This document shows, piece after piece, positions 48,532 through 60,889 of a stretch of 64,000 nt of DNA. Under the pieces are notes generated by a model. That model made no database searches. It saw only the letters and a list, made by a program, of their open reading frames with translations, and was not told the origin of the DNA. The position numbers were made by a program, and so were the translations under genes. Where the stretch lies: positions 186,001 through 250,000 of the IMG/VR virus record IMGVR_UViG_3300040801_001224. One strand, 5' to 3'. Each line of letters begins with the position of its first letter. Within the stretch, counting starts at the first letter, position 1.

Positions 48532-48560
48532 TTGACAAAGGATATAGATTGTAGTATAAT
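48532..48560 (+). promoter_or_regulatory. sigma70 promoter
   Basis: TTGACA-17-TATAAT. Confidence 0.8.
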
Positions 48561-48872: not shown

Positions 48873-49241
48873 GTGGCAAAACATATCGTAATAGTAGACG
48901 ACGACCCTACGGTTATTCAGATACTAAAAGCGTTTATTCGCCAGGCCATTAATGGCAATGGTCATTACGATATTGTCACCTTTGATAACATAACTGAAGC
49001 CTGTGATTATATAACTGAACATCCTGTGGATTTATTATTCCAGGATGTTCACGTTCAAAGCGACTTAGACGGATTAATTGCCGCTCGAATAGCCAAAAAC
49101 TTTGGTGTTCCGGTAGTTGTTATCACTTCTGATATCTGTCTATCAATAGTTGAAAGAGTCGCTAAGGGTAGATACGACAAGCTAATACTAAAGCCCATCA
49201 GTATTGGTGAAGTGAAACACGCCCTAGATCTTTGTAAATAA
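48873..49241 (+). CDS. Stand-alone CheY-like receiver domain protein
   Basis: IVIVDDD, phospho-acceptor D (LFQD), T/S (VITSD) and K (LKP) all present. Confidence 0.88.
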   Translation: MAKHIVIVDDDPTVIQILKAFIRQAINGNGHYDIVTFDNITEACDYITEHPVDLLFQDVHVQSDLDGLIAARIAKNFGVPVVVITSDICLSIVERVAKGRYDKLILKPISIGEVKHALDLCK

Positions 49242-49300: not shown

Positions 49301-51670
49301 ATGTACGTACACGCACGATATTCTAAAGAAGAAGACATAATCAACATCGTTGAACGGGTAGACGGTGAAAGAGTTTATAAAGAATTTAAGCCCGACCATT
49401 CATTTTACGTTGAAGATCCACGTGGCACATATACGAGTATCTTTGGCGACACAATCACAAAGTTACAACCTAACAGCTACAAAGACAAGCGTAGGCTAGG
49501 CAAATTACATGGCGCAAAGAAAACATTTGAGTTTGACTTGCCACCAATTGCTCGTTGTATTGAACAACACTACAGTGACTCAGATCCCGCAGATTTACAT
49601 GTTGCTTTCTTCGATATTGAGACCGACTTCGACAAGGAGTTGGGCTACTCTAGTCCTGATGAAGCCTTTAATCCAATTACATCTATCGCTGTATATTTAC
49701 AGTGGATGGAGCAGATGATATGTCTAGCAGTTCCGCCCAAAACCCTAACCTGGGAAGAAGCACAGGAGATAGCAGGTGAAGTACCTGACGTTATTTTATG
49801 TAAAACAGAAAATGAAATGCTTCAGATGTTTTTAACAATTATTGATGACGCAGATGTGCTTAGTGGTTGGAACTCAGAATTTTACGATATTCCATACACA
49901 ATTCATAGAATTATGAATCAATTAGGAAAGCATGAAGCACGTAAAATGTGTTTATGGGATGAAATGCCACGCAAGAAGACCATTGAGCGTTTTGAAAAGC
50001 AGGAAGTAGTATATGAGTTAACTGGTCGTGTACATCTAGATTACTTAGAACTATACAAGAAGTACACATATGAGGAACGACAATCCTATAAACTGGATGC
50101 TATTGCTGAATTTGAGTTAGGTGAGAAAAAGGTCGAATATCCTGGAACACTTGATCAATTGTACAAAGAAGATTTTAAGAAGTTCCTGGAATACAACATC
50201 CAGGATACCATGCTCCTGGAAAAGCTGGATAAAAAATTAGACTTTATATCACTAGCCAACACAATTGCCCTGGGCTCAAGCGTATTGATGCCAGCAACGA
50301 TGGGTGCGGTAGCAGTAACAGAACAATCCATCATTAAAGAAGCGCACAGACGTGACATGATGGTGCCTGACAAGAAGCAAGGCGATAAAGGTGATACCCG
50401 AGCGGCAGGGGGCTGGGTACAGCAACCTAAGAAAGGCTTACATCATTGGGTAGGCAGTTCGGATTTGAACTCACTGTATCCATCAGTTATCCGTGCGTTA
50501 AATATGAGTCCAGAAACAATTGTGGGACAGCTAGTAACTGACAAGACGAATCAGGAAATTGCTGAATGGATTGCCAGTGCTAAGTCACGTACTTTCGCAG
50601 GATGGTGGAATGATAAATTTAATACCCTGGAGATGGATGATTTTATCAACAAGAACAGTAGTAACAAACACACATTCCAGATGGAGGATGGCTCAAAGAG
50701 TCCTATAACTGGCGCAGAGTTACATGAGATTGTTTTTAAGAGTGGGCAACCCTGGTGTATTAGTGCTAACGGCACAATATTTAGGACAGACATTGATGGT
50801 ATTATTCCTGGACTACTAGCAGGCTGGTACGCAGATCGTAAAGCAATGAAGAAAATTCTCTGGAATCTAATTCAATTGCGTACGGGTCTAATCGATGCTA
50901 AAATTGACAACTCTGATATTACAGTGCCAAGCGAAGTGCCTAACTTGCGTAAACTGGCATATGGTGAGCTTGACAAGTGCTTTGAATTGGAAGGCTCTGA
51001 ACGTGCGGCATTTGCCAGCAAGTTTGGGTTAGAAGTTAGAGACGGAAAGTTTTGGGCAAGAGATGAATTTGTTAAAGACTACAAAGACGCTGAAGGCTAC
51101 TGGGACAAACGTCAGCTGGTACGTAAGATTAACCTTAACTCACTATACGGCGGATTGCTTAATGAGCATTGTAGATTTTATGACCATAGATTAGGACAAT
51201 CAACTACACTAACCGGACGTAGTATTACAAGACATATGGCGGCAAAAACAAATGAATTTTTAACTGGTGAATACTCAGAGAAAGGCAAGACTATTATATA
51301 TGGTGACACCGACAGTCTGACAGGTGATTCGATTATTGAAACTTCATTAGGTCAGATGACCATCGAAGAATTGTACGAAAAATGTGAATCATATACAGAA
51401 AACGAAGACAAAGAATATGGGCATGATAATGATATGATGGTCATGTCGTATGATGAAAGTAGAGATGAACCATACATGGGACACTTCGATTATGTGTACC
51501 GCCATAAAGTGTCAAAAGATTTATATGAAATAGAAGATGATAACGGCAACGTAGTGACTGTGACAGAAGATCATTCGGTTATGGTTGAGCGTGATGGAAA
51601 GTTAATAGAAATGAAGCCAGCAGATATACAGGAAGCCGATATCATTATTTCACTTGAAATTACTAAATAA
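49301..51670 (+). CDS. Family B DNA polymerase N-terminal half fused to split intein N-fragment
   Basis: Exo DIETD, SDLNSLYPS, KINLNSLYG, YGDTD followed by intein block A SLTGDSII. Confidence 0.95.
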   Translation: MYVHARYSKEEDIINIVERVDGERVYKEFKPDHSFYVEDPRGTYTSIFGDTITKLQPNSYKDKRRLGKLHGAKKTFEFDLPPIARCIEQHYSDSDPADLHVAFFDIETDFDKELGYSSPDEAFNPITSIAVYLQWMEQMICLAVPPKTLTWEEAQEIAGEVPDVILCKTENEMLQMFLTIIDDADVLSGWNSEFYDIPYTIHRIMNQLGKHEARKMCLWDEMPRKKTIERFEKQEVVYELTGRVHLDYLELYKKYTYEERQSYKLDAIAEFELGEKKVEYPGTLDQLYKEDFKKFLEYNIQDTMLLEKLDKKLDFISLANTIALGSSVLMPATMGAVAVTEQSIIKEAHRRDMMVPDKKQGDKGDTRAAGGWVQQPKKGLHHWVGSSDLNSLYPSVIRALNMSPETIVGQLVTDKTNQEIAEWIASAKSRTFAGWWNDKFNTLEMDDFINKNSSNKHTFQMEDGSKSPITGAELHEIVFKSGQPWCISANGTIFRTDIDGIIPGLLAGWYADRKAMKKILWNLIQLRTGLIDAKIDNSDITVPSEVPNLRKLAYGELDKCFELEGSERAAFASKFGLEVRDGKFWARDEFVKDYKDAEGYWDKRQLVRKINLNSLYGGLLNEHCRFYDHRLGQSTTLTGRSITRHMAAKTNEFLTGEYSEKGKTIIYGDTDSLTGDSIIETSLGQMTIEELYEKCESYTENEDKEYGHDNDMMVMSYDESRDEPYMGHFDYVYRHKVSKDLYEIEDDNGNVVTVTEDHSVMVERDGKLIEMKPADIQEADIIISLEITK
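51314..51667 (+). mobile_element. Split intein N-fragment (118 aa, Ser1)
   Basis: SLTGDSIIET..TIEEL; block B VTVTEDHSV; stop immediately afterwards. Confidence 0.9.
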
Positions 51671-54112: not shown

Positions 54113-54141
54113 TTGACACAACCAATACACTATGTTATAAT
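54113..54141 (+). promoter_or_regulatory. sigma70 promoter
   Basis: TTGACA-17-TATAAT. Confidence 0.8.
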
Positions 54142-54911: not shown

Positions 54912-55084
54912 TGACAGTAACAAAGTACACACCATTAATGCTTAAATGTTTTCTCAGAGGACTGAGTCCTTTTGAGTGTTATGATGTACTTTCTGAAGAA
55001 TACCCGGGAGATGAACTCCCAACGCTTGAATGTATTCGAGCGATATATCAAGGATTTGAGAAAAAAGATAATGACGAATTTTAA
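54911..55084 (+). CDS. 57-aa protein, possible helix-turn-helix
   Basis: My translation: MTVTKYTPLMLKCFLRGLSPFECYDVLSEEYPGDELPTLECIRAIYQGFEKKDNDEF; TAATG overlap with clamp stop. Confidence 0.55.
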   Translation: MTVTKYTPLMLKCFLRGLSPFECYDVLSEEYPGDELPTLECIRAIYQGFEKKDNDEF

Positions 55085-56612
55085 CGACCAATATGATGAA
55101 AGCTGGGCAAGATTTTTGCCTGCTATCTCTGGCTTTTACACATCATTGCTTGGAGCAATGGAACGAGATCCACACTACACCGATAATGACCGACCTAATG
55201 GCTTGCCAGCAGGTATGGACAAAGGCTTCGAAGGATTGGATTACCTCACTGATCAAGGATATTTCCAGTATGACTACTCGTTATATTCTGCAGGTCATGC
55301 GGCATTGGATCTCGAAAAGAGTAAAGAGAAAGAAGGCATGGTGTCACGACGTGGCGGTCACACTACTCTGGTAGGCGACTCCGGCGGATTCCAGATTGGT
55401 AAGGGCGTTATTAAATTAGACTGGGAACGTTTCTACGAAATGGAAGATGATCCAAGCACATGGATTGGCGGCAAGTATGTTGGCGATGCCGACAAAGTAC
55501 GCATGAAGATCTTACGTTGGTTAGAAGCTACCGCAGATTGGTCAATGACCCTCGATGTTCCGTCTTGGGCGGCCTTACCTCAAAACCAAGCACGTACAGG
55601 ACTAAAGAACTTTGCGGACTGTTTACGTGCTACCTTACACAACAATGACTTCTTTGTTAAGAATCGTGAGCCAGGCGCTACGAAATTCCTTAACGTGTTA
55701 CAGGGCGGTAACTGGACAGAAGCAGAAGCATGGTATCAAGCGGTTAAAGACTATCCGTTTGAGGGCTGGGCTTTTGGTGCGGCAAATGTGCGTAACATGT
55801 ATATCGCACTAAGACGTCTAATTATCATGCGTGATGAAAAGATGCTTGAAGGTAAGGATTGGATTCACATCCTGGGTATTTCTAAATTGGATTGGGCTTG
55901 TATGGCTACTGCTATTCAGCGTGAACTACGTAAGGAAGCTAATCCTAACATTACTGTTAGCTTTGATTGTGCGAGCCCTTTCATTAGTGCGGCCAACGGG
56001 CTAATGTATACTGATTCAGTTACTACTGGTGATAAGTTCGCTTACCCAATGGAGAGTTTTCCGGATCAGAAGATGTTTAAGGGCAGTAACTTGCCTTTCC
56101 CTAACAAGAGTCCTATTGGCGATATGCTGACAATGGGTGATCTCTGTGTTCGTGGTGAAGGTGACTTAAACAAGAACGGCAAGGAGACTAAAACTTCTTG
56201 GGACACATTTAGTTATGGACTTATTATGGCACACAACACTGCCAAGCACATTGAGTCTGTTATTAAGGCTAACCGGTTGGTTGATATTGAAAGTTCTTAC
56301 ATCAAGCCAGATATCAGAGACTGGAAAAAGCTTAAGTCGAGTGATAAGTCAGACAACTTGTCAGTATATGTTCCACGCAATATCTTATACTTCAACCACT
56401 TTGTTGAAGAACTATTCCAGAGTGAAAAGCCAATGGATCTATTAGAAAAGAACCATAGATTCCTGGATTCGATAAGTAACAATGTACAGCTTCAAAACAG
56501 TGATGTCGCATTCGCAAACTTGTTTGAGATGCCTGAAACAGCAAATGTTACAGCAGACACAATGGATGAAGAAAAACTGAACGAACTTGAACGATCTATT
56601 ATGGGAGATTAA
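55071..56612 (+). CDS. tRNA-guanine transglycosylase-fold protein (DpdA-like DNA 7-deazaguanine insertase)
   Basis: GDSGGFQI, MTLDVP, LNVLQGG, WIHILG, SFDCASP; next to queD and near queE; start reassigned to MTNFND. Confidence 0.85.
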   Translation: MTNFNDQYDESWARFLPAISGFYTSLLGAMERDPHYTDNDRPNGLPAGMDKGFEGLDYLTDQGYFQYDYSLYSAGHAALDLEKSKEKEGMVSRRGGHTTLVGDSGGFQIGKGVIKLDWERFYEMEDDPSTWIGGKYVGDADKVRMKILRWLEATADWSMTLDVPSWAALPQNQARTGLKNFADCLRATLHNNDFFVKNREPGATKFLNVLQGGNWTEAEAWYQAVKDYPFEGWAFGAANVRNMYIALRRLIIMRDEKMLEGKDWIHILGISKLDWACMATAIQRELRKEANPNITVSFDCASPFISAANGLMYTDSVTTGDKFAYPMESFPDQKMFKGSNLPFPNKSPIGDMLTMGDLCVRGEGDLNKNGKETKTSWDTFSYGLIMAHNTAKHIESVIKANRLVDIESSYIKPDIRDWKKLKSSDKSDNLSVYVPRNILYFNHFVEELFQSEKPMDLLEKNHRFLDSISNNVQLQNSDVAFANLFEMPETANVTADTMDEEKLNELERSIMGD

Positions 56613-56613
56613 T

Positions 56614-56892
56614 ATGAAGAAGGTAGTATTTTTGCTTGTAGTACTTCTAACACTCATGCCGGTTAAGACTGAAGCTAATGACTTTTTGGTTCTCGCAACA
56701 TCACTATGCGAGAACACTAAAGTTGACAATAAGTCAGGCATTCGTAAAGCACTCAAAAAGCATGGTGTTAAGATACGTAGAATATATGATGACATCAAGT
56801 GTAATGACATGAGTCTACATGCGTTTGCTAAAGCTAATGGTGCTGAAGAAGTAGCCGCTTGGTACGAAAAGAAGGTTAAGAAAAATCTATGA
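56614..56892 (+). CDS. Secreted DUF3718-like protein
   Basis: Signal peptide then SLCENTKVDNKSGIRKALKKHGVKIRRIYDDIKCNDMSLHAFA. Confidence 0.7.
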   Translation: MKKVVFLLVVLLTLMPVKTEANDFLVLATSLCENTKVDNKSGIRKALKKHGVKIRRIYDDIKCNDMSLHAFAKANGAEEVAAWYEKKVKKNL

Positions 56893-56908: not shown

Positions 56909-57274
56909 ATGAAAACTGAAACGAAAATGATATGGGTGACTTTCCAGAAAGCTGGGATACATTATTACCCTGCGGCGAAAACTGATAAAAATCTTAATGA
57001 TGTCAGTTATCTTGGCAACAAGCATAGACATTTGTTTAAATTTAAAGTTTCCATTGAAGTATTCCATAATGATCGAGACATTGAGTTTCATCAATTTTTG
57101 AATTGGATAGAAGGGCTTTATGAATCACAAGTACTGTCATTAGATAGTCGCAGTTGTGAAATGATTTCAGATGAACTAGCTGAGAAAATTACAAGCAAGT
57201 ATGCAGGAAGAAAATTAGTCATAGAGGTCTCCGAAGACGGAGAATGCGGAAGTACAATCGAGTATTGTTCTTAA
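56909..57274 (+). CDS. queD: QueD-like 6-carboxy-tetrahydropterin synthase (T-fold)
   Basis: HYYP..HRHLF.F.V..HNDRDIEF..SCEM..EVSEDGECG. Confidence 0.8.
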   Translation: MKTETKMIWVTFQKAGIHYYPAAKTDKNLNDVSYLGNKHRHLFKFKVSIEVFHNDRDIEFHQFLNWIEGLYESQVLSLDSRSCEMISDELAEKITSKYAGRKLVIEVSEDGECGSTIEYCS

Positions 57275-58042
57275 AATTTCATTATCATTAGAGTTATTAA
57301 TATAAGATTCAGACATTCGCAGAATTCGGTATCCGAAGTCATTTGCTACATACGAACAAGTTGTATCCCAGTTTTTCACTTCGATACTTGAGTGCCAATA
57401 GTCACCATCGACTTCTATGATTAAGTTATGATCAGGTAAGAGAAAGTCATATAGATGTCTAAAGAATAGTTTGTTTCTCCTATGCTCTTTAGTTTGTATT
57501 AAAAATTGAAATTCATGACGTATATTATTATGGATGAGGATTTCTAATATTCTTTTTTCAATAGAAGTCATTTTAAACTTATTCGATTTTCGTGTTTCAG
57601 TAATTGTTTTGGACAACATTTCTCTATGCTTATCAGTTCGAACATAACGTCCCATTTTTGATGTGTCTGATTTGGGCTTTCTCATTTTTTTCCGAATTTC
57701 TGGATCGTTTGTGAATTTCCCTTCAAAATTTGGGTTCTTTTCGCCTTGAGATAGTCCTAATCTAATTCTCGTTTCTGATATTTTGGATCCGACCCGTTCC
57801 TTATATGATTTTGTTTTTCTTATATTCGAGTTATTGCCTTTTATTGACATTGATTTCATATGAGCTTCTTTGGAACCTGGTTTCTGTCTCCACGTTTCTT
57901 CTCTCGACTTTTGCTGTTTTTTTATAACTCCTGGGCATTTCGTTACCTTGTATTCACATCTGAATACCTTCGTATTCACGGATTGAAATTTTGCTGGAGA
58001 CCCACAATACTCACATACCTTTCCTTCAATAAAATCTGTCAT
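57215..58042 (-). CDS. Free-standing Vsr/DUF559-like homing endonuclease with NUMOD3-like segments
   Basis: YDFLLPDHNLIIEVDGDYWH; CEYCG zinc knuckle; antisense, AT-rich; late box at 58079-58086. Confidence 0.85.
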   Translation of the reverse strand: MTDFIEGKVCEYCGSPAKFQSVNTKVFRCEYKVTKCPGVIKKQQKSREETWRQKPGSKEAHMKSMSIKGNNSNIRKTKSYKERVGSKISETRIRLGLSQGEKNPNFEGKFTNDPEIRKKMRKPKSDTSKMGRYVRTDKHREMLSKTITETRKSNKFKMTSIEKRILEILIHNNIRHEFQFLIQTKEHRRNKLFFRHLYDFLLPDHNLIIEVDGDYWHSSIEVKNWDTTCSYVANDFGYRILRMSESYINNSNDNEILRTILDCTSAFSVFGDLYD

Positions 58043-58151
58043 GTAGTTTACCTATTAATTCTAGTTCGCTATCATTGTTATTTATCTTTTTTTAGGTTAT
58101 AATTAAATCAATATTGAACAGACATAGAGTATACTCCAGATAAATAACAGT

Positions 58152-58808
58152 ATGAAGAGGTATATAGGAAAAATAACACCATTCGCATATGCGGCATTTG
58201 CGGCAATTGTTTCAATGTGGCTATTGGCAATGTTCATGTCTATTTCTCAAGAAATTCAGTTGTCAATTACATTATTAATATCCTTCCTCATCGGTTTAAT
58301 GGCTTTCAACATAGCAGGAGCTATAGATGCCAGAAGTTATAAAAAAATGACTCGTGATCCAGAATCCGGAGCTCGGACAAGGCAATATTTCATTGATATA
58401 TCAGAACGTGAAATATCAAGGAGCATAAGAAGCCAGACACCAATTTATGCGATTGCGTTTAAGTTGGACCAATACGAAGAAATTCATAGTGAAGCTCCCA
58501 AATGTATTGCTACTATCTTTGAGCAGATGACTATACATTTAAGAAAAAATACACGAAAAAATGATGTCCTAGCTAGACTAAGTGATAATGCCTTTGTACT
58601 ATTGCTGTCAGACGACACTAAAGAAGAACATACCGGAATGCTTGCTGAACGAGTTCAGAATACTGTGAACTCACTAATGTGTACCGCAAATAATAAAACA
58701 TACCAAAATCTAACAGCCACTACATTCGTTGAACCATATGATATGGATAACGACATGAGCTCTGAAGACTTTACAACTCGCCTAGAAAACATCTTAGAAA
58801 ACGCTTGA
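58152..58808 (+). CDS. Two-TM membrane protein with degenerate GGDEF domain
   Basis: DPESGARTRQYF, RKND-x5-SDNAF (intact I-site, dead A-site); leaderless after TAAATA at 58141. Confidence 0.8.
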   Translation: MKRYIGKITPFAYAAFAAIVSMWLLAMFMSISQEIQLSITLLISFLIGLMAFNIAGAIDARSYKKMTRDPESGARTRQYFIDISEREISRSIRSQTPIYAIAFKLDQYEEIHSEAPKCIATIFEQMTIHLRKNTRKNDVLARLSDNAFVLLLSDDTKEEHTGMLAERVQNTVNSLMCTANNKTYQNLTATTFVEPYDMDNDMSSEDFTTRLENILENA

Positions 58809-58833
58809 CAAACACACCAATTTATAGTATAAT
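58805..58833 (+). promoter_or_regulatory. sigma70 promoter
   Basis: TTGACA-17-TATAAT. Confidence 0.8.
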
Positions 58834-58860
58834 GACTATAACTATAAATACAGGTGACTA

Positions 58861-59961
58861 ATGAACACAATTTTTATTATACCTATCGAACCTATCGATA
58901 CACGTTATACCCGTCATTGGTATGAACACATACCGGAATTACTTAAAGCCGCTGGAGATGACCGATACAGAGTCATAACAATTGATGGCACAGACGTCCC
59001 ACCAGTTCCTACTCCAGGCGCATTCTTAGACTTTGGCGCAACGAATATTTATAAGAGTTCACAGCTCATTAAAATTGCTGACAAGTTCCGCCGTGGTGAG
59101 GTTAAGGATGGTGATAAGTTTTTATTTACTGATGCGTGGAATACAAGTATCTTACAAGTAAAGTATATGAGTGAACTATTGGGCGTTAAAACTGAGTTAC
59201 ATGGCTTATGGCATGCTGGTTCTTATGATCCACAAGATTTCTTAGGACGTTTAATCAAGGACAAACGTTGGACAAATAACACGGAAAAGGCAATCTTTTA
59301 TTCATTGGATAAGAATTGGTTTGCTACTGAGTTTCATGTTGAAATGTTTATGGCTAACGTATTTTTAGAAACTGATGTATTTAAAAATGATCAAGACTTA
59401 TCACACAGTGACAGGACAAGGCGTATTGGCATAACTGGTTGGCCAATGGAATACATGACTGAAATGTTAGAGCGTTATGAAGCTCCAAAGAAAGACCTCA
59501 TACTATTTCCGCATCGTCTAGCACCTGAGAAGCAGTTGGATATCTTCAAGGACTTAGAAAAGGAACTGCCCGAATACGAATGGGTTGTCTGTCAGGAAAA
59601 GAAACTGACCAAGAACGAATACCATAAATTATTGGGTAGAGCTAAGATGGTGTTTAGTGCTAACTTACAGGAAACCCTGGGTATTAGTGTTCCTGAAGGA
59701 ATGGCGACAGGCGCTATACCCTGTGTTCCAGACCGTTTAAGTTATGCGGAAATGTACAGAGATGAATGGAAGTATCCAAGTGAATGGACTGAAAGCTTTG
59801 ATTCATATACACGATACAAAGAGAAACTGGTTTCTAGAATTAAAGAACATATGGAATCATATGATGAAAAAATGCGTGAAGTTATTTATGATGACTACAA
59901 AGTTCTACATGAAAAATTCTTTAGCGCAGGACCATTAGTAGAGAGTTTAGTTAGTGAGTAA
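58861..59961 (+). CDS. GT-B (GT4-like) glycosyltransferase
   Basis: ILFPHRLAPEKQ, ANLQETLGISVPEG (E-x7-E), VPDRLSYAE. Confidence 0.85.
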   Translation: MNTIFIIPIEPIDTRYTRHWYEHIPELLKAAGDDRYRVITIDGTDVPPVPTPGAFLDFGATNIYKSSQLIKIADKFRRGEVKDGDKFLFTDAWNTSILQVKYMSELLGVKTELHGLWHAGSYDPQDFLGRLIKDKRWTNNTEKAIFYSLDKNWFATEFHVEMFMANVFLETDVFKNDQDLSHSDRTRRIGITGWPMEYMTEMLERYEAPKKDLILFPHRLAPEKQLDIFKDLEKELPEYEWVVCQEKKLTKNEYHKLLGRAKMVFSANLQETLGISVPEGMATGAIPCVPDRLSYAEMYRDEWKYPSEWTESFDSYTRYKEKLVSRIKEHMESYDEKMREVIYDDYKVLHEKFFSAGPLVESLVSE

Positions 59962-60889
59962 AATTTTAGTAACTGGTGGAAGTGGCTTCATAGGCACTTC
60001 AGTCTGCAATATGTTGGTTAAGGAAGGCTATGAAGTCCATAACTTAGATCGTGTTAAGAAAGTCATTCCTGGCACCAAGCAACATTGGATGGATTTAGGC
60101 AATACAGAACTGCTCGATCAGATCCTATGCGAACATCAGTATGACGCAGTAATACATCTAGCTTCAGAACATGAAGTTGGGAGGAGTATTGTTGAACCAG
60201 AACTCTATTATGAAAACAACGTTGTTAATACGATTAGCTTGCTTCGTCTCATGAAGAAGCATGGCATTGACAAATTAATTATGAGTAGCAGTAGCTCTGT
60301 GTATGGTGACGCTGATTGTTATCCAACACATGAAGAAATGCCAAAAAAGCCATTGAGTCCTTATGCGAGAACTAAGGCTATTATGGAAGATATGCTACAA
60401 GACTTTGATCGTGCTTATGGCATTCAATATACAGCACTAAGATATTTTAATGCTGTAGGCGCAGGGTATACGCAGGAGCCTGCAACACATATTATGCCCA
60501 AGCTATGTCAGAAAGTTTTATCGGGTGAGACATTCAATGTTTATGGTGGTGATTACGATACTGCTGATGGAACGTGTGAACGTGATTATACTCATTTAGA
60601 AGATATAGCAGAAGCGCATATATTGGCGCTGAATTATTTGTTTAATGGTGGCACCAGCCAGATACTAAACATTGGCGAAGGGTATACTTGGAGTGTACTT
60701 GAAATATTAGAAAAATTTGAAGAAGTTACTGGTGAAGAAGTAAAATACGAATTCACTGACAGGAGAGAAGGTGATGTTATGACGACATCTTCCGATTCGA
60801 GCAAAGCAAAGGACTTACTTGGTTGGGAACCTTCTTATAATATAGAAGACATGATAAAAGACGCATGGGAATGGGAGAAAAACAAATGA
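59954..60889 (+). CDS. galE: UDP-glucose 4-epimerase
   Basis: VTGGSGFIG, SSSSSVYG, YARTK, LRYFN, RDYTH, RREGD. Confidence 0.93.
   Translation: MSKILVTGGSGFIGTSVCNMLVKEGYEVHNLDRVKKVIPGTKQHWMDLGNTELLDQILCEHQYDAVIHLASEHEVGRSIVEPELYYENNVVNTISLLRLMKKHGIDKLIMSSSSSVYGDADCYPTHEEMPKKPLSPYARTKAIMEDMLQDFDRAYGIQYTALRYFNAVGAGYTQEPATHIMPKLCQKVLSGETFNVYGGDYDTADGTCERDYTHLEDIAEAHILALNYLFNGGTSQILNIGEGYTWSVLEILEKFEEVTGEEVKYEFTDRREGDVMTTSSDSSKAKDLLGWEPSYNIEDMIKDAWEWEKNK

What the first reader, a model, noticed from the sequence alone, without database searches (positions are those of the whole stretch)
58139..58808. Phage membrane GGDEF protein with dead active site but intact c-di-GMP I-site
Seen: two TM helices and a GGDEF fold in which the signature is SDNAF and the metal-binding DxDxFK is lost (FKLDQY), yet RxxD (RKND) sits exactly five residues upstream as in canonical I-sites. 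It is a leaderless late gene. Established: degenerate GGDEF domains with RxxD act as c-di-GMP receptors (PelD, PopA). Inference: a phage c-di-GMP sensor, sponge or dominant-negative partner of host cyclases that alters motility, biofilm or receptor-polysaccharide secretion, or links lysis timing to host lifestyle. With the receiver protein and the CRP box, this suggests the phage taps three host signalling currencies (phosphorelay, c-di-GMP, cAMP).
Basis: partly seen in the sequence, partly recalled or inferred. Interest (0 to 1): 0.7.

Follow-up and report, generated by a model that had tools for sequence, protein, structure and literature searches.

The report
Phage membrane dead-GGDEF c-di-GMP receptor candidate
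A 328-kb uncultured jumbo phage encodes a small inner-membrane protein whose diguanylate-cyclase (GGDEF) domain has lost every catalytic residue but keeps the c-di-GMP-binding "I-site", so it is probably a phage-made sensor or sink for the bacterial biofilm/motility signal c-di-GMP.

Summary
Window 58152-58808 (+) encodes a 218-aa protein: a two-helix membrane hairpin followed by a GGDEF fold (Pfam 38.7 bits; AF2 pLDDT 95; all top PDB folds are diguanylate cyclases). All catalytic and substrate positions are replaced, and the chain ends before the phosphate-binding Lys/Arg. RxxD (RKND) lies exactly five residues before SDNAF.

Only six relatives exist in about 5.8 billion proteins, all on phage-like contigs. 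All lack the active site. All keep R93, R135, D138, R142 and R167.

"Leaderless late gene" is also supported. GATAAATA-N5-ATG precedes the gene here and in six of seven homologue loci. It is a genome-wide promoter class found before tail-fibre, virion and endolysin genes, and the phage encodes a gp55-like late sigma factor.

The same phage carries an intact-looking GGDEF-EAL membrane enzyme behind an early sigma-70-type promoter.

Best reading: a late-expressed, membrane-anchored I-site c-di-GMP receptor or sink (binding about 0.55). Its output is unknown.

A PelD/PelF-like link to the neighbouring glycosyltransferase is unlikely. PA5oct and Phosso keep that transferase, without the GGDEF gene, beside 7-deazaguanine genes. 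Binding itself is untested.

The parts
58139..58146 (+). GATAAATA, a T4-late-type promoter motif. It is followed by 5 nt (acagt) and the ATG, which places the predicted transcription start on or next to the A of the start codon (leaderless mRNA, no Shine-Dalgarno).
   Evidence: 15 genes with identical spacing; 10-fold upstream enrichment. (same motif upstream of homologues in L005/L006, L008, L009, L010, L014; N7 in L007). (motif precedes tail fibre, virion proteins, endolysin). (gp55-like late sigma in the genome).
58152..58808 (+). CDS, 218 aa (P0001): 2-TM hairpin plus catalytically dead GGDEF domain
58179..58241 (+). TM helix 1 (residues ~10-30); P10, W23 and L25 invariant in the family
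58260..58322 (+). TM helix 2 (residues ~37-57; G48 invariant). It continues as a short stalk helix to residue 67, directly into the GGDEF domain.
58353..58805 (+). GGDEF-fold domain (residues 68-218), truncated before the C-terminal AK..GRN phosphate-binding motif
58428..58430 (+). R93, invariant. Probable equivalent of the PleD secondary I-site Arg (R313); the equivalence is approximate.
   Evidence: PleD-family model coordinates. PleD numbering is from my own knowledge.
58458..58475 (+). FKLDQY in place of the metal-binding (F/L)DxDxF(K). The first Asp is replaced by K104.
58554..58565 (+). RKND (R135-D138), the primary I-site RxxD. R and D are invariant in all seven family members.
58581..58595 (+). 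SDNAF (144-148) in place of GG(D/E)EF. Family variants: NDNAF, DRNTF, KDNEF, RDNEF, GDNLF, KGSEF.
58650..58652 (+). R167 in the AER motif, invariant. Equivalent of the third I-site residue (PleD R390).
   Evidence: numbering from my own knowledge
58805..58833 (+). Perfect sigma-70 consensus promoter (TTGACA-17-TATAAT) overlapping the stop codon. It drives the downstream glycosyltransferase gene and is conserved in L005, L007 and L009.
58075..58103 (+). Weak sigma-70-like site (TTGTTA-17-TATAAT, 10/12). Probably not used: the phage's own early promoters are 75 perfect 12/12 sites.

Best explanation
The gene encodes a membrane-anchored, enzymatically dead GGDEF protein that acts as an I-site-type c-di-GMP-binding protein made by the phage late in infection.

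Shown:
- An N-in/C-in two-helix hairpin with a ~6-residue outer loop, so there is no periplasmic input domain.
- A GGDEF fold held ~10 residues from the membrane.
- Every GTP/Mg2+ contact is replaced or truncated, so it cannot make c-di-GMP.
- The RxxD motif and two further arginines are invariant across a phage-only family that has otherwise diverged to 25-55% identity.
- A conserved GATAAATA-N5-ATG promoter arrangement.

Inferred:
- The I-site binds an intercalated c-di-GMP dimer, as in PleD, PelD, PopA and PssE.
- The protein dimerises through TM2 and the stalk, as membrane cyclases do.
- Ligand binding either sequesters c-di-GMP at the membrane or changes the packing of the conserved hairpin (P10, W23, L25, G48) to act on an unidentified membrane partner.
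- It works with the phage's own early-promoter GGDEF-EAL enzyme (P0151), which would set the c-di-GMP level that this late protein reads or buffers.
- The mRNA is leaderless and transcribed by host RNA polymerase carrying the phage gp55-like late sigma.
For: GGDEF identity: Pfam 38.7 bits; AF2 pLDDT 95.2; Foldseek top hits all GGDEF.

Dead A-site against kept I-site. In 62 active homologues D104, K109, N112, D120, G144, G145, E146 and E147 equivalents are 95-100% conserved. The family keeps essentially none of them but keeps R93, R135, D138, R142 and R167 in 7 of 7 members.

The family is sharply delimited (280 bits falling to 91 bits) and small: 7 members in 5.8 billion / 1.84 billion proteins. 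All members lie in phage-like contexts.

Second c-di-GMP gene in the same genome: P0151, 658 aa, 2 TM + GGDEF (RLGGDEF, REED I-site) + EAL with all signature motifs. It has its own phage family beside tail-fibre genes. One of its homologues (P0156) comes from the same sample as family member P0004.

Precedent: PssE, a membrane degenerate GGDEF (DKDDA) with RxxD five residues upstream, binds 2 c-di-GMP with Kd 0.79 uM (PMC4125290).

Late/leaderless.
Against: No binding evidence of any kind exists; the c-di-GMP docking job was not folded.

R135, D138, R142 and R93 are also near-invariant in the closest active cyclases. Their retention could therefore partly reflect ancestry or fold stability rather than ligand binding. 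With only seven sequences the selection argument is qualitative.

No output partner is identified. No PilZ or other c-di-GMP effector is present in the genome.

The conserved D145/N146 in the former active-site loop hints at a remodelled function that I cannot explain.

The host is unknown (microbial-mat metagenome), so whether it uses c-di-GMP is assumed.

Transcription start and timing are inferred from motifs, not from RNA.
Confidence: 0.55

Rival explanations
1. Dominant-negative or scaffolding partner of active cyclases. The dead GGDEF domain, held at the membrane, would pair with a host membrane diguanylate cyclase or with the phage's own GGDEF-EAL protein P0151. Pairing would go through the stalk/TM helices or through c-di-GMP cross-links between primary and secondary I-sites, giving non-productive heterodimers and shutting down c-di-GMP synthesis.
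For: Cyclase catalysis needs two GTP-loaded GGDEF domains (established knowledge). The family keeps both the primary (R135/D138/R167) and the putative secondary (R93) I-site arginines used for inter-domain cross-linking in PleD (PleD data from my own knowledge). Bacterial active 2TM-GGDEF proteins of similar size are among its nearest relatives, for example P0063. P0151 is also a 2-TM membrane protein. Phage peptides that target the cyclase YfiN are known (PMC8085984).
Against: No interaction was tested. The TM hairpins of P0001 and P0151 show no evident similarity. GGDEF identity between P0001 and P0151 is only ~15%. This rival is compatible with the best explanation rather than exclusive of it.
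Confidence: 0.15
2. A degenerate domain with no nucleotide ligand. The GGDEF fold would serve only as a cytoplasmic protein-interaction or structural module of a late membrane protein, for example a holin/antiholin-like or superinfection-exclusion factor. RxxD would persist for structural reasons or by ancestry.
For: Some degenerate GGDEF domains (GdpS, CsrD, the LapD GGDEF) do not use an I-site (my own knowledge). N-in/C-in 2-TM topology and late expression resemble class II holins. There is a sub-threshold PHROG holin match, E 0.15, residues 15-60. The endolysin gene uses the same promoter type with near-leaderless spacing.
Against: The holin hit is not significant. The endolysin gene lies 27 kb away. 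Four of four I-site positions are invariant at 25-55% identity while about eight normally more conserved A-site positions are lost, which is hard to explain by structure alone. Known non-binding degenerate GGDEFs generally lack RxxD (my own knowledge).
Confidence: 0.15
3. Binds a different nucleotide. It could be a sponge for a cyclic (oligo)nucleotide immune signal, or bind GTP/ATP at the remodelled x-D-N-x-F loop, acting as an anti-defence factor or a nucleotide-pool sensor linked to the neighbouring GTP-derived 7-deazaguanine pathway.
For: D145/N146 are conserved in 5 of 7 members at the former active-site loop. The gene always follows the 117-121-aa phrog_17812 gene, within a cluster that relatives associate with QueE/FolE. 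GGDEF-related palm domains act in cyclic-nucleotide defence systems (PMC12657218).
Against: All guanine, phosphate and metal contacts are lost. No PADLOC match. A membrane anchor is unusual for known phage sponges (my own knowledge). The neighbours occur without this gene in PA5oct and Phosso.
Confidence: 0.08
4. A PelD/PssE-like activator of the adjacent glycosyltransferase. c-di-GMP binding would switch on the GT1-like enzyme (58861-59961), supplied by the GalE epimerase (59954-60889), to make a polysaccharide.
For: The GGDEF-GT(-epimerase) order is conserved in L007 and L009, down to 28% identity. PelD/PelF and PssE/PssC pair a membrane I-site receptor with a glycosyltransferase (PMC4125290; PMC7112168).
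Against: PA5oct (44% id) and Phosso (48% id) have the same transferase directly after the 540-aa homologue or the 127-aa gene, with no GGDEF gene, next to QueE/FolE. It looks like a DNA/nucleotide-modification enzyme. The transferase has its own conserved perfect sigma-70 (early) promoter, while the GGDEF gene has a late-type promoter. Subclade L010/L014 lacks the transferase downstream. No membrane synthase or export genes are nearby.
Confidence: 0.05

Closest known systems
PssE (Lmo0531) of Listeria monocytogenes, and YdaK of Bacillus: membrane degenerate-GGDEF I-site receptors
   Same: N-terminal TM anchor plus a single degenerate GGDEF domain (PssE has DKDDA). RxxD lies exactly five residues upstream. 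PssE binds two c-di-GMP per domain (PMC4125290; YdaK: PMC9800504).
   Different: Those are bacterial and encoded inside EPS synthase operons, whose transferases they activate. The phage protein is shorter (218 aa, 2 TM). It is truncated before the C-terminal GGDEF strand. It is phage-encoded and late-expressed, and it has no synthase operon.
PelD (Pseudomonas aeruginosa)
   Same: Inner-membrane protein whose degenerate GGDEF domain binds c-di-GMP through RxxD plus a downstream Arg (my own knowledge; PMC7112168).
   Different: PelD has 4 TM and a GAF domain and sits in the pel operon. Here there are 2 TM, no GAF (Pfam finds GGDEF only) and no pel genes.
PopA (Caulobacter) and CdgA/Bd3125 (Bdellovibrio): soluble degenerate-GGDEF I-site effectors
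   Same: Dead A-site and a functional I-site used as the receptor (my own knowledge; PMC3271064).
   Different: Those are soluble, with receiver or other N-terminal domains. They are not membrane hairpins and not viral.
Active I-site-regulated diguanylate cyclases (PleD, WspR, TM1788, DgcB)
   Same: Same fold. These are the best sequence and structure matches. I-site residues are shared.
   Different: All catalytic and substrate residues are absent in the phage protein.
Phage peptides that bind the cyclase YfiN (Pseudomonas phages)
   Same: Phage interference with host c-di-GMP signalling (PMC8085984).
   Different: Those are small peptides with no GGDEF fold. They inhibit a host enzyme rather than bind the messenger.

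Membership tests
GGDEF domain superfamily (Pfam PF00990) | Profile match above the curated threshold | tested here: met
   38.7 bits against a cutoff of 23.8, residues 69-207. TIGR00254 scored 34.0, below its cutoff of 37.4.
GGDEF domain superfamily (Pfam PF00990) | Palm-like beta-alpha-alpha-beta-beta-alpha-beta fold | tested here: met
   AF2 pLDDT 95.2. Foldseek top 50 PDB hits are all GGDEF domains, with TM-score normalised by target length up to 0.81.
Active diguanylate cyclase | GG(D/E)EF signature | tested here: not met
   SDNAF. No family member has GG(D/E)EF.
Active diguanylate cyclase | Metal-binding Asp (PleD D327), Lys (K332) and guanine contacts (N335, D344) | tested here: not met
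   K104, E109, H112 and A120 at positions that are D/K/N/D in 59-61 of 62 active homologues.
Active diguanylate cyclase | C-terminal phosphate-binding Lys/Arg (A-K-x-x-G-R-N) | tested here: not met
   The protein ends (..ILENA) before this motif.
I-site c-di-GMP receptors with degenerate GGDEF (PelD/PopA/PssE type) | RxxD exactly five residues upstream of the (degenerate) signature | tested here: met
   R135-K-N-D138 + VLARL + SDNAF. Conserved in 7 of 7 family members.
I-site c-di-GMP receptors with degenerate GGDEF (PelD/PopA/PssE type) | Additional Arg completing the site (PleD R390 / PelD R402 equivalent) | tested here: met
   R167 in the AER motif is invariant. The equivalence to R390 rests on motif alignment and on my recollection of the PleD sequence.
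I-site c-di-GMP receptors with degenerate GGDEF (PelD/PopA/PssE type) | Measured c-di-GMP binding that is abolished by RxxD mutation | not testable with these tools
   Complex prediction with the c-di-GMP ligand was not folded.
PelD proper | 4 TM + GAF + GGDEF architecture and pel operon context | tested here: not met
   2 TM and GGDEF only. Neighbours are the phrog_17812 protein, a homing endonuclease, a GT1-like transferase, GalE and a PRTase.
T4-type late gene (gp55-dependent promoter) | TATAAATA-like -10 element without a -35, ~6 nt before the start site; phage late sigma present; motif shared with structural and lysis genes | tested here: met
   GATAAATA at 58139-58146. There are 78 such motifs upstream of genes. 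They precede tail fibre, virion proteins and endolysin. gp55-like sigma matches phrog_12791 at E 3.7e-73. Actual timing was not measured.
Leaderless mRNA | Transcription start at or within a few nt of the start codon; no Shine-Dalgarno | tested here: inconclusive
   The spacing (motif-N5-ATG) is identical in 15 genes and conserved in 6 of 7 homologue loci, with no room for an SD. No RNA data: only DNA runs hold the sequence.

The most novel reading that the evidence does not exclude
This jumbo-phage lineage carries a self-contained viral c-di-GMP circuit. An early-expressed membrane GGDEF-EAL enzyme rewrites the host's c-di-GMP level. A late-expressed, leaderless, membrane-hairpin I-site reader converts that level into a membrane event, such as lysis timing (a c-di-GMP-gated holin/antiholin-like hairpin), superinfection exclusion, or shut-off of host matrix or pilus machines. 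This would be the first virus-encoded c-di-GMP receptor.
Probability: 0.15. Interest if true: 0.8.

Novelty: new variant of a known kind. Interest (0 to 1): 0.55.

Why it matters
c-di-GMP decides whether bacteria swim, stick or build matrix, and it controls surface structures that phages use as receptors. Phages are known to interfere with it through small peptides that bind host cyclases.

My searches found no close relative of this receptor-type GGDEF protein, nor of the paired GGDEF-EAL enzyme, in about 50,700 deposited phage genomes. The GGDEF-EAL hits there were low-identity matches to short or apparently bacterial records. I also found no such phage case in the literature searched.

If binding is confirmed, this family would be a minimal (218 aa) natural I-site module at the membrane. 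It would also show that large phages both write and read a host second messenger.

The promoter result matters as well. One uncultured phage has two very clean promoter classes, each with a leaderless subclass. This is directly usable for annotating related jumbo phages.

Tried and rejected
1. Complex prediction of residues 60-218 with two c-di-GMP: not folded, because the tool gives no result for ligand partners. This is no evidence either way.

2. Close relatives among cultured phages: megablast of the locus and tblastn of the protein found nothing.

3. Word-indexed search of 5.8 billion proteins with the single sequence found only itself. The exhaustive phmmer search and the profile search were needed.

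4. The search for related loci in IMG/VR with the alignment failed because there was no conserved stretch. With P0001 and with P0004 it found no relatives.

5. PelD/PelF-like coupling to the downstream glycosyltransferase was considered and largely rejected on comparative context and on the different promoter classes.

The three-sequence alignment gave pLDDT 49, which is unusable, so no fold search was made.

7. The upstream sigma-70-like site at 58075-58103 as the gene's promoter: unlikely. It matches 10/12, whereas the phage's own early promoters are 75 perfect 12/12 sites.

8. Defence or anti-defence assignment: no PADLOC hit.

9. RNA evidence for the transcription start: only DNA runs from a microbial-mat metagenome hold the sequence.

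10. Holin assignment: the PHROG holin hit at E 0.15 is not significant.

11. Pfam TGT on the genome found nothing, so the DSGGFQ-containing 546-aa neighbour remains unassigned.
Full report
WHAT IS THERE

The window is bases 186001-250000 of a 328,096-bp IMG/VR virus record with direct terminal repeats. GC content is 40%. Its DNA polymerase is 52-53% identical to that of Pseudomonas jumbo phage PA5oct and relatives. Only DNA runs from a microbial-mat metagenome hold the locus. A neighbouring DUF3718 gene points to a Pseudomonadota host.

The finding corresponds to one ORF, 58152..58808 (+), 218 aa, P0001. It is the first base of a GATAAATA promoter motif.

ANATOMY

Hydropathy gives two TM segments, residues 11-29 and 37-55.

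An AlphaFold2 model built on a 68-sequence alignment has mean pLDDT 95.2. It shows helices at 10-30 and 33-67, followed by a beta-alpha-alpha-beta-beta-alpha-beta domain. Both termini of the hairpin are basic and the connecting loop is about six residues. The protein is therefore N-in/C-in, has no periplasmic sensor, and holds its globular domain about ten residues from the membrane.

Pfam GGDEF matches at 38.7 bits against a cutoff of 23.8. The 50 best Foldseek matches in the PDB are all GGDEF domains: SiaD, TM1788, WspR, PleD, DgcB and others.

ACTIVE SITE AGAINST I-SITE

HMMER alignments to solved cyclases and MAFFT alignments give these placements:
- SDNAF sits on GGEEF.
- FKLDQY sits on (F/L)DIDHF.
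- RKND sits on RxxD, with exactly five residues (VLARL) before SDNAF.

I tabulated the columns in 62 nearest non-family homologues. The metal Asp, the catalytic Lys, the guanine-binding Asn and Asp, and G-G-(D/E)-E are each present in 56-61 of 62. P0001 has K104, E109, H112, A120, S144, D145, N146 and A147 at these positions. The chain also stops before the A-K-x-x-G-R-N phosphate-binding motif. The protein cannot be a cyclase.

By contrast, R93, R135, D138, R142 and R167 are retained. By motif position, R135/D138 are the primary I-site. R167 (in AER) corresponds to PleD R390. R93 corresponds approximately to PleD R313, the secondary I-site. PleD numbering is from my own knowledge; it is consistent with the PleD-family model coordinates.

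A PHAGE-ONLY FAMILY

The word-indexed search found only the query. The exhaustive phmmer search of 1.84 billion cluster representatives and a profile search of 5.8 billion proteins found six relatives of the same size and architecture:
- P0002: 55% identity
- P0003: 46%
- P0271: 32%
- P0004: 30%
- P0005: 28%
- P0008: 26%

Scores then drop sharply, from 280 to 91 bits, into ordinary cyclases.

In all seven members the signature is degenerate: SDNAF, NDNAF, DRNTF, KDNEF, RDNEF, GDNLF, KGSEF. The first metal Asp is K, R or E. R93, R135, D138, R142, F148 and R167 are invariant, as are hairpin residues P10, W23, L25 and G48.

An enzyme that no longer makes c-di-GMP has no need for product inhibition. 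Keeping the I-site across this divergence is therefore the classical signature of a receptor. PssE of Listeria is a precedent: DKDDA, RxxD five residues upstream, membrane-anchored, Kd 0.79 uM, two ligands per domain (PMC4125290).

The caveat is that these residues are also near-invariant in the closest active relatives, and seven sequences give only a qualitative argument.

GENOMIC CONTEXT

The gene lies in the replication/nucleotide-metabolism region. The order here is:
1. DNA polymerase (49301-51670)
2. A 247-aa protein
3. A 546-aa protein containing DSGGFQ (54972-56612)
4. A DUF3718 protein
5. A 121-aa phrog_17812 protein
6. A DUF559/HNH homing endonuclease on the minus strand
7. P0001
8. 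A GT1-like glycosyltransferase
9. GalE
10. A phosphoribosyltransferase
11. A HIT protein

A 9.3-kb metagenomic contig (L007) has the same order without the endonuclease and DUF3718 genes. L009 keeps 117-aa/GGDEF/GT. L010 and L014 have 120-aa/Hc1/GGDEF with different downstream genes. The 117-121-aa proteins are homologous in all of these contexts.

PA5oct and Sinorhizobium phage Phosso have the same glycosyltransferase (44-48% identity). In them it directly follows the 540-aa homologue or the 127-aa gene, with no GGDEF gene, and lies close to QueE and FolE. This phage also has QueD.

The transferase therefore belongs to a conserved, probably 7-deazaguanine/DNA-modification module. The GGDEF gene is an accessory insertion in one sub-lineage. 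I rate a PelD/PelF- or PssE/PssC-like coupling as unlikely. An attempt to fold the transferase gave pLDDT 49 and was not used.

A SECOND c-di-GMP GENE

Scanning the whole phage genome with Pfam GGDEF and EAL found a 658-aa protein, P0151, at G000 112033-114009, outside the window. It has:
- two N-terminal TM helices;
- a canonical GGDEF domain (DLDDFK, NDEFGH, RLGGDEF) with its own RxxD (REED);
- an EAL domain carrying all the usual signature motifs (EITES, N, E-x-x-E, DDFGKGYSS, KLD, EGIE, QGYYF).

P0151 has its own family of same-length homologues (66-42% identity) on phage-like contigs, next to tail-fibre (Peptidase_S74) and SNase genes. One of them (P0156) comes from the same sample as family member P0004.

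A conserved TTGACA-17-TATACT site lies about 170 nt upstream of P0151, in front of a short ORF.

No close relative of either protein was found among cultured phages. No PilZ is present.

EXPRESSION

ATAAATA is about ten-fold enriched in the 60 nt upstream of genes (79 against 8.2 expected). It has a sharp peak 12 nt before start codons, seen in 15 genes, which is the (G/T)ATAAATA-N5-ATG arrangement. A further ~55 copies lie 16-69 nt (mostly 25-40 nt) upstream of genes that have Shine-Dalgarno sequences.

The motif precedes a tail-fibre gene, virion structural genes and the endolysin. The phage encodes a homologue of T4 gp55, the late sigma factor (phrog_12791, E 3.7e-73).

In T4, TATAAATA spans -13 to -6 (established knowledge). 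N5 therefore puts +1 on the A of the ATG.

The same GATAAATA-N5-ATG precedes the homologues in L005/L006, L008, L009, L010 and L014 (N7 in L007). In three of these loci it comes just after a terminator-like hairpin. In L007 it overlaps the upstream gene's stop codon and in L009 it directly follows it.

The phage's early promoters form a distinct class: 75 perfect TTGACA-17/18-TATAAT sites. One of them overlaps the P0001 stop codon and drives the transferase, and it is conserved in L005, L007 and L009. The 10/12 sigma-70-like site upstream of P0001 (58075-58103) does not look like a member of this class.

Timing and transcription start remain inferences. No RNA data exist.

MECHANISM AND RIVALS

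Best explanation (confidence about 0.55): a late, membrane-anchored I-site c-di-GMP binder. It acts either as a sink or as a receptor whose conserved hairpin addresses an unidentified membrane partner. It works downstream of the phage's early GGDEF-EAL enzyme.

Rivals:
- A dominant-negative or scaffold partner of cyclases (0.15; compatible with binding).
- A ligand-free membrane protein, possibly holin-like (0.15). The PHROG holin hit at E 0.15 is not significant.
- A binder of another nucleotide (0.08). There is no PADLOC hit.
- A regulator of the adjacent transferase (0.05).

The only direct in-silico test of binding that I attempted was not executed by the tool.

NOVELTY

Degenerate GGDEF I-site receptors are well known (PelD, PopA, PssE, YdaK, CdgA). 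This one is a new variant in several respects:
- It is virus-encoded.
- It is reduced to a two-helix hairpin plus a truncated domain.
- It is transcribed as a probable leaderless late mRNA.
- It is paired in the same genome with a viral GGDEF-EAL enzyme.

The literature searches found phage peptides that target a host cyclase (PMC8085984). They found no phage-encoded GGDEF receptor.

Noticed in passing
G000:C1:112033-114009 (outside the window; L002:808-2784): A second c-di-GMP gene in the same phage: a 658-aa protein with 2 TM, an intact-looking GGDEF (RLGGDEF with a REED I-site) and an EAL with all signature motifs. It lies behind a conserved sigma-70-type promoter and a short upstream ORF. 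It has its own phage-borne family (66-42% identity) next to tail-fibre and SNase genes.
   Followed up: partly
Whole genome; in the window e.g. 58805-58833, 54113-54141, 48532-48560: Two very clean promoter classes. One is 75 perfect TTGACA-N17/18-TATAAT sites on the + strand. The other is ~78 (G/T)ATAAATA sites upstream of genes. Each class has a leaderless subclass: start codon 6-7 nt after the last base of TATAAT in 13 genes, and GATAAATA-N5-ATG in 15 genes.
   Followed up: partly
G000:C1:65476-66384 (L031:943-1851): A 302-aa homologue of the T4 gp55 late sigma factor (phrog_12791, E 3.7e-73). This fits the T4-late-like GATAAATA motif.
   Followed up: yes
window 54972-56612 (+): A 546-aa protein with no Pfam, PHROG, NCBIfam or PDB sequence match, but containing the tRNA-guanine-transglycosylase-like motif DSGGFQ. 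In PA5oct its homologue is directly followed by the glycosyltransferase, with QueE nearby. It may be a divergent DpdA-like DNA transglycosylase.
   Followed up: partly
window 56909-57274 (+); L007:5638-5994; L009:456-809; L010:773-1135; L014:785-1147; L012:6118-6501: A 117-127-aa family (phrog_17812) with invariant HRH, SCEM and EDGE motifs. It lies upstream of the dead-GGDEF gene in every context seen, directly or with one gene between. In Phosso, which has no GGDEF gene, it sits next to the transferase. Function unknown; Pfam PTPS does not match it.
   Followed up: partly
window 57215-58042 (-): A DUF559/HNH-type homing endonuclease on the opposite strand, inserted between the 121-aa gene and the GGDEF gene. 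Its 3' end overlaps the 121-aa ORF by 60 nt. It is absent from the syntenic contigs L007 and L009. It has its own GATAAATA motif.
   Followed up: partly
window 56587-56892 (+): A small DUF3718 protein with a hydrophobic N-terminus (possible signal peptide, by eye). The family is bacterial (Pseudomonadota). The gene is absent from the syntenic contig L007. It is a possible host-derived gene and a hint to the host.
   Followed up: partly
window 48873-49241 (+) and G000:C1:253817-255694: Two receiver-domain proteins: a stand-alone 122-aa REC, and a 625-aa kinase-like protein (phrog_10912) with a C-terminal REC. Together with the two GGDEF genes, this phage has an unusually rich signalling repertoire.
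   Followed up: no
L010:1147-1323 and L014:1162-1335: In the second subclade a 57-58-aa Hc1 (histone H1-like) gene sits between the 120-aa gene and the dead-GGDEF gene.
   Followed up: no
window 58834-58860: The glycosyltransferase gene has a TATAAATA motif 17 nt before its ATG in addition to its perfect sigma-70 promoter (window and L007). This suggests both early and late transcription.
   Followed up: no
PA5oct literature (PMC7318152): The relative PA5oct lacks both GGDEF genes. During infection it upregulates host psl exopolysaccharide genes and downregulates type IV pilus genes, which are classic c-di-GMP-controlled outputs in Pseudomonas.
   Followed up: no
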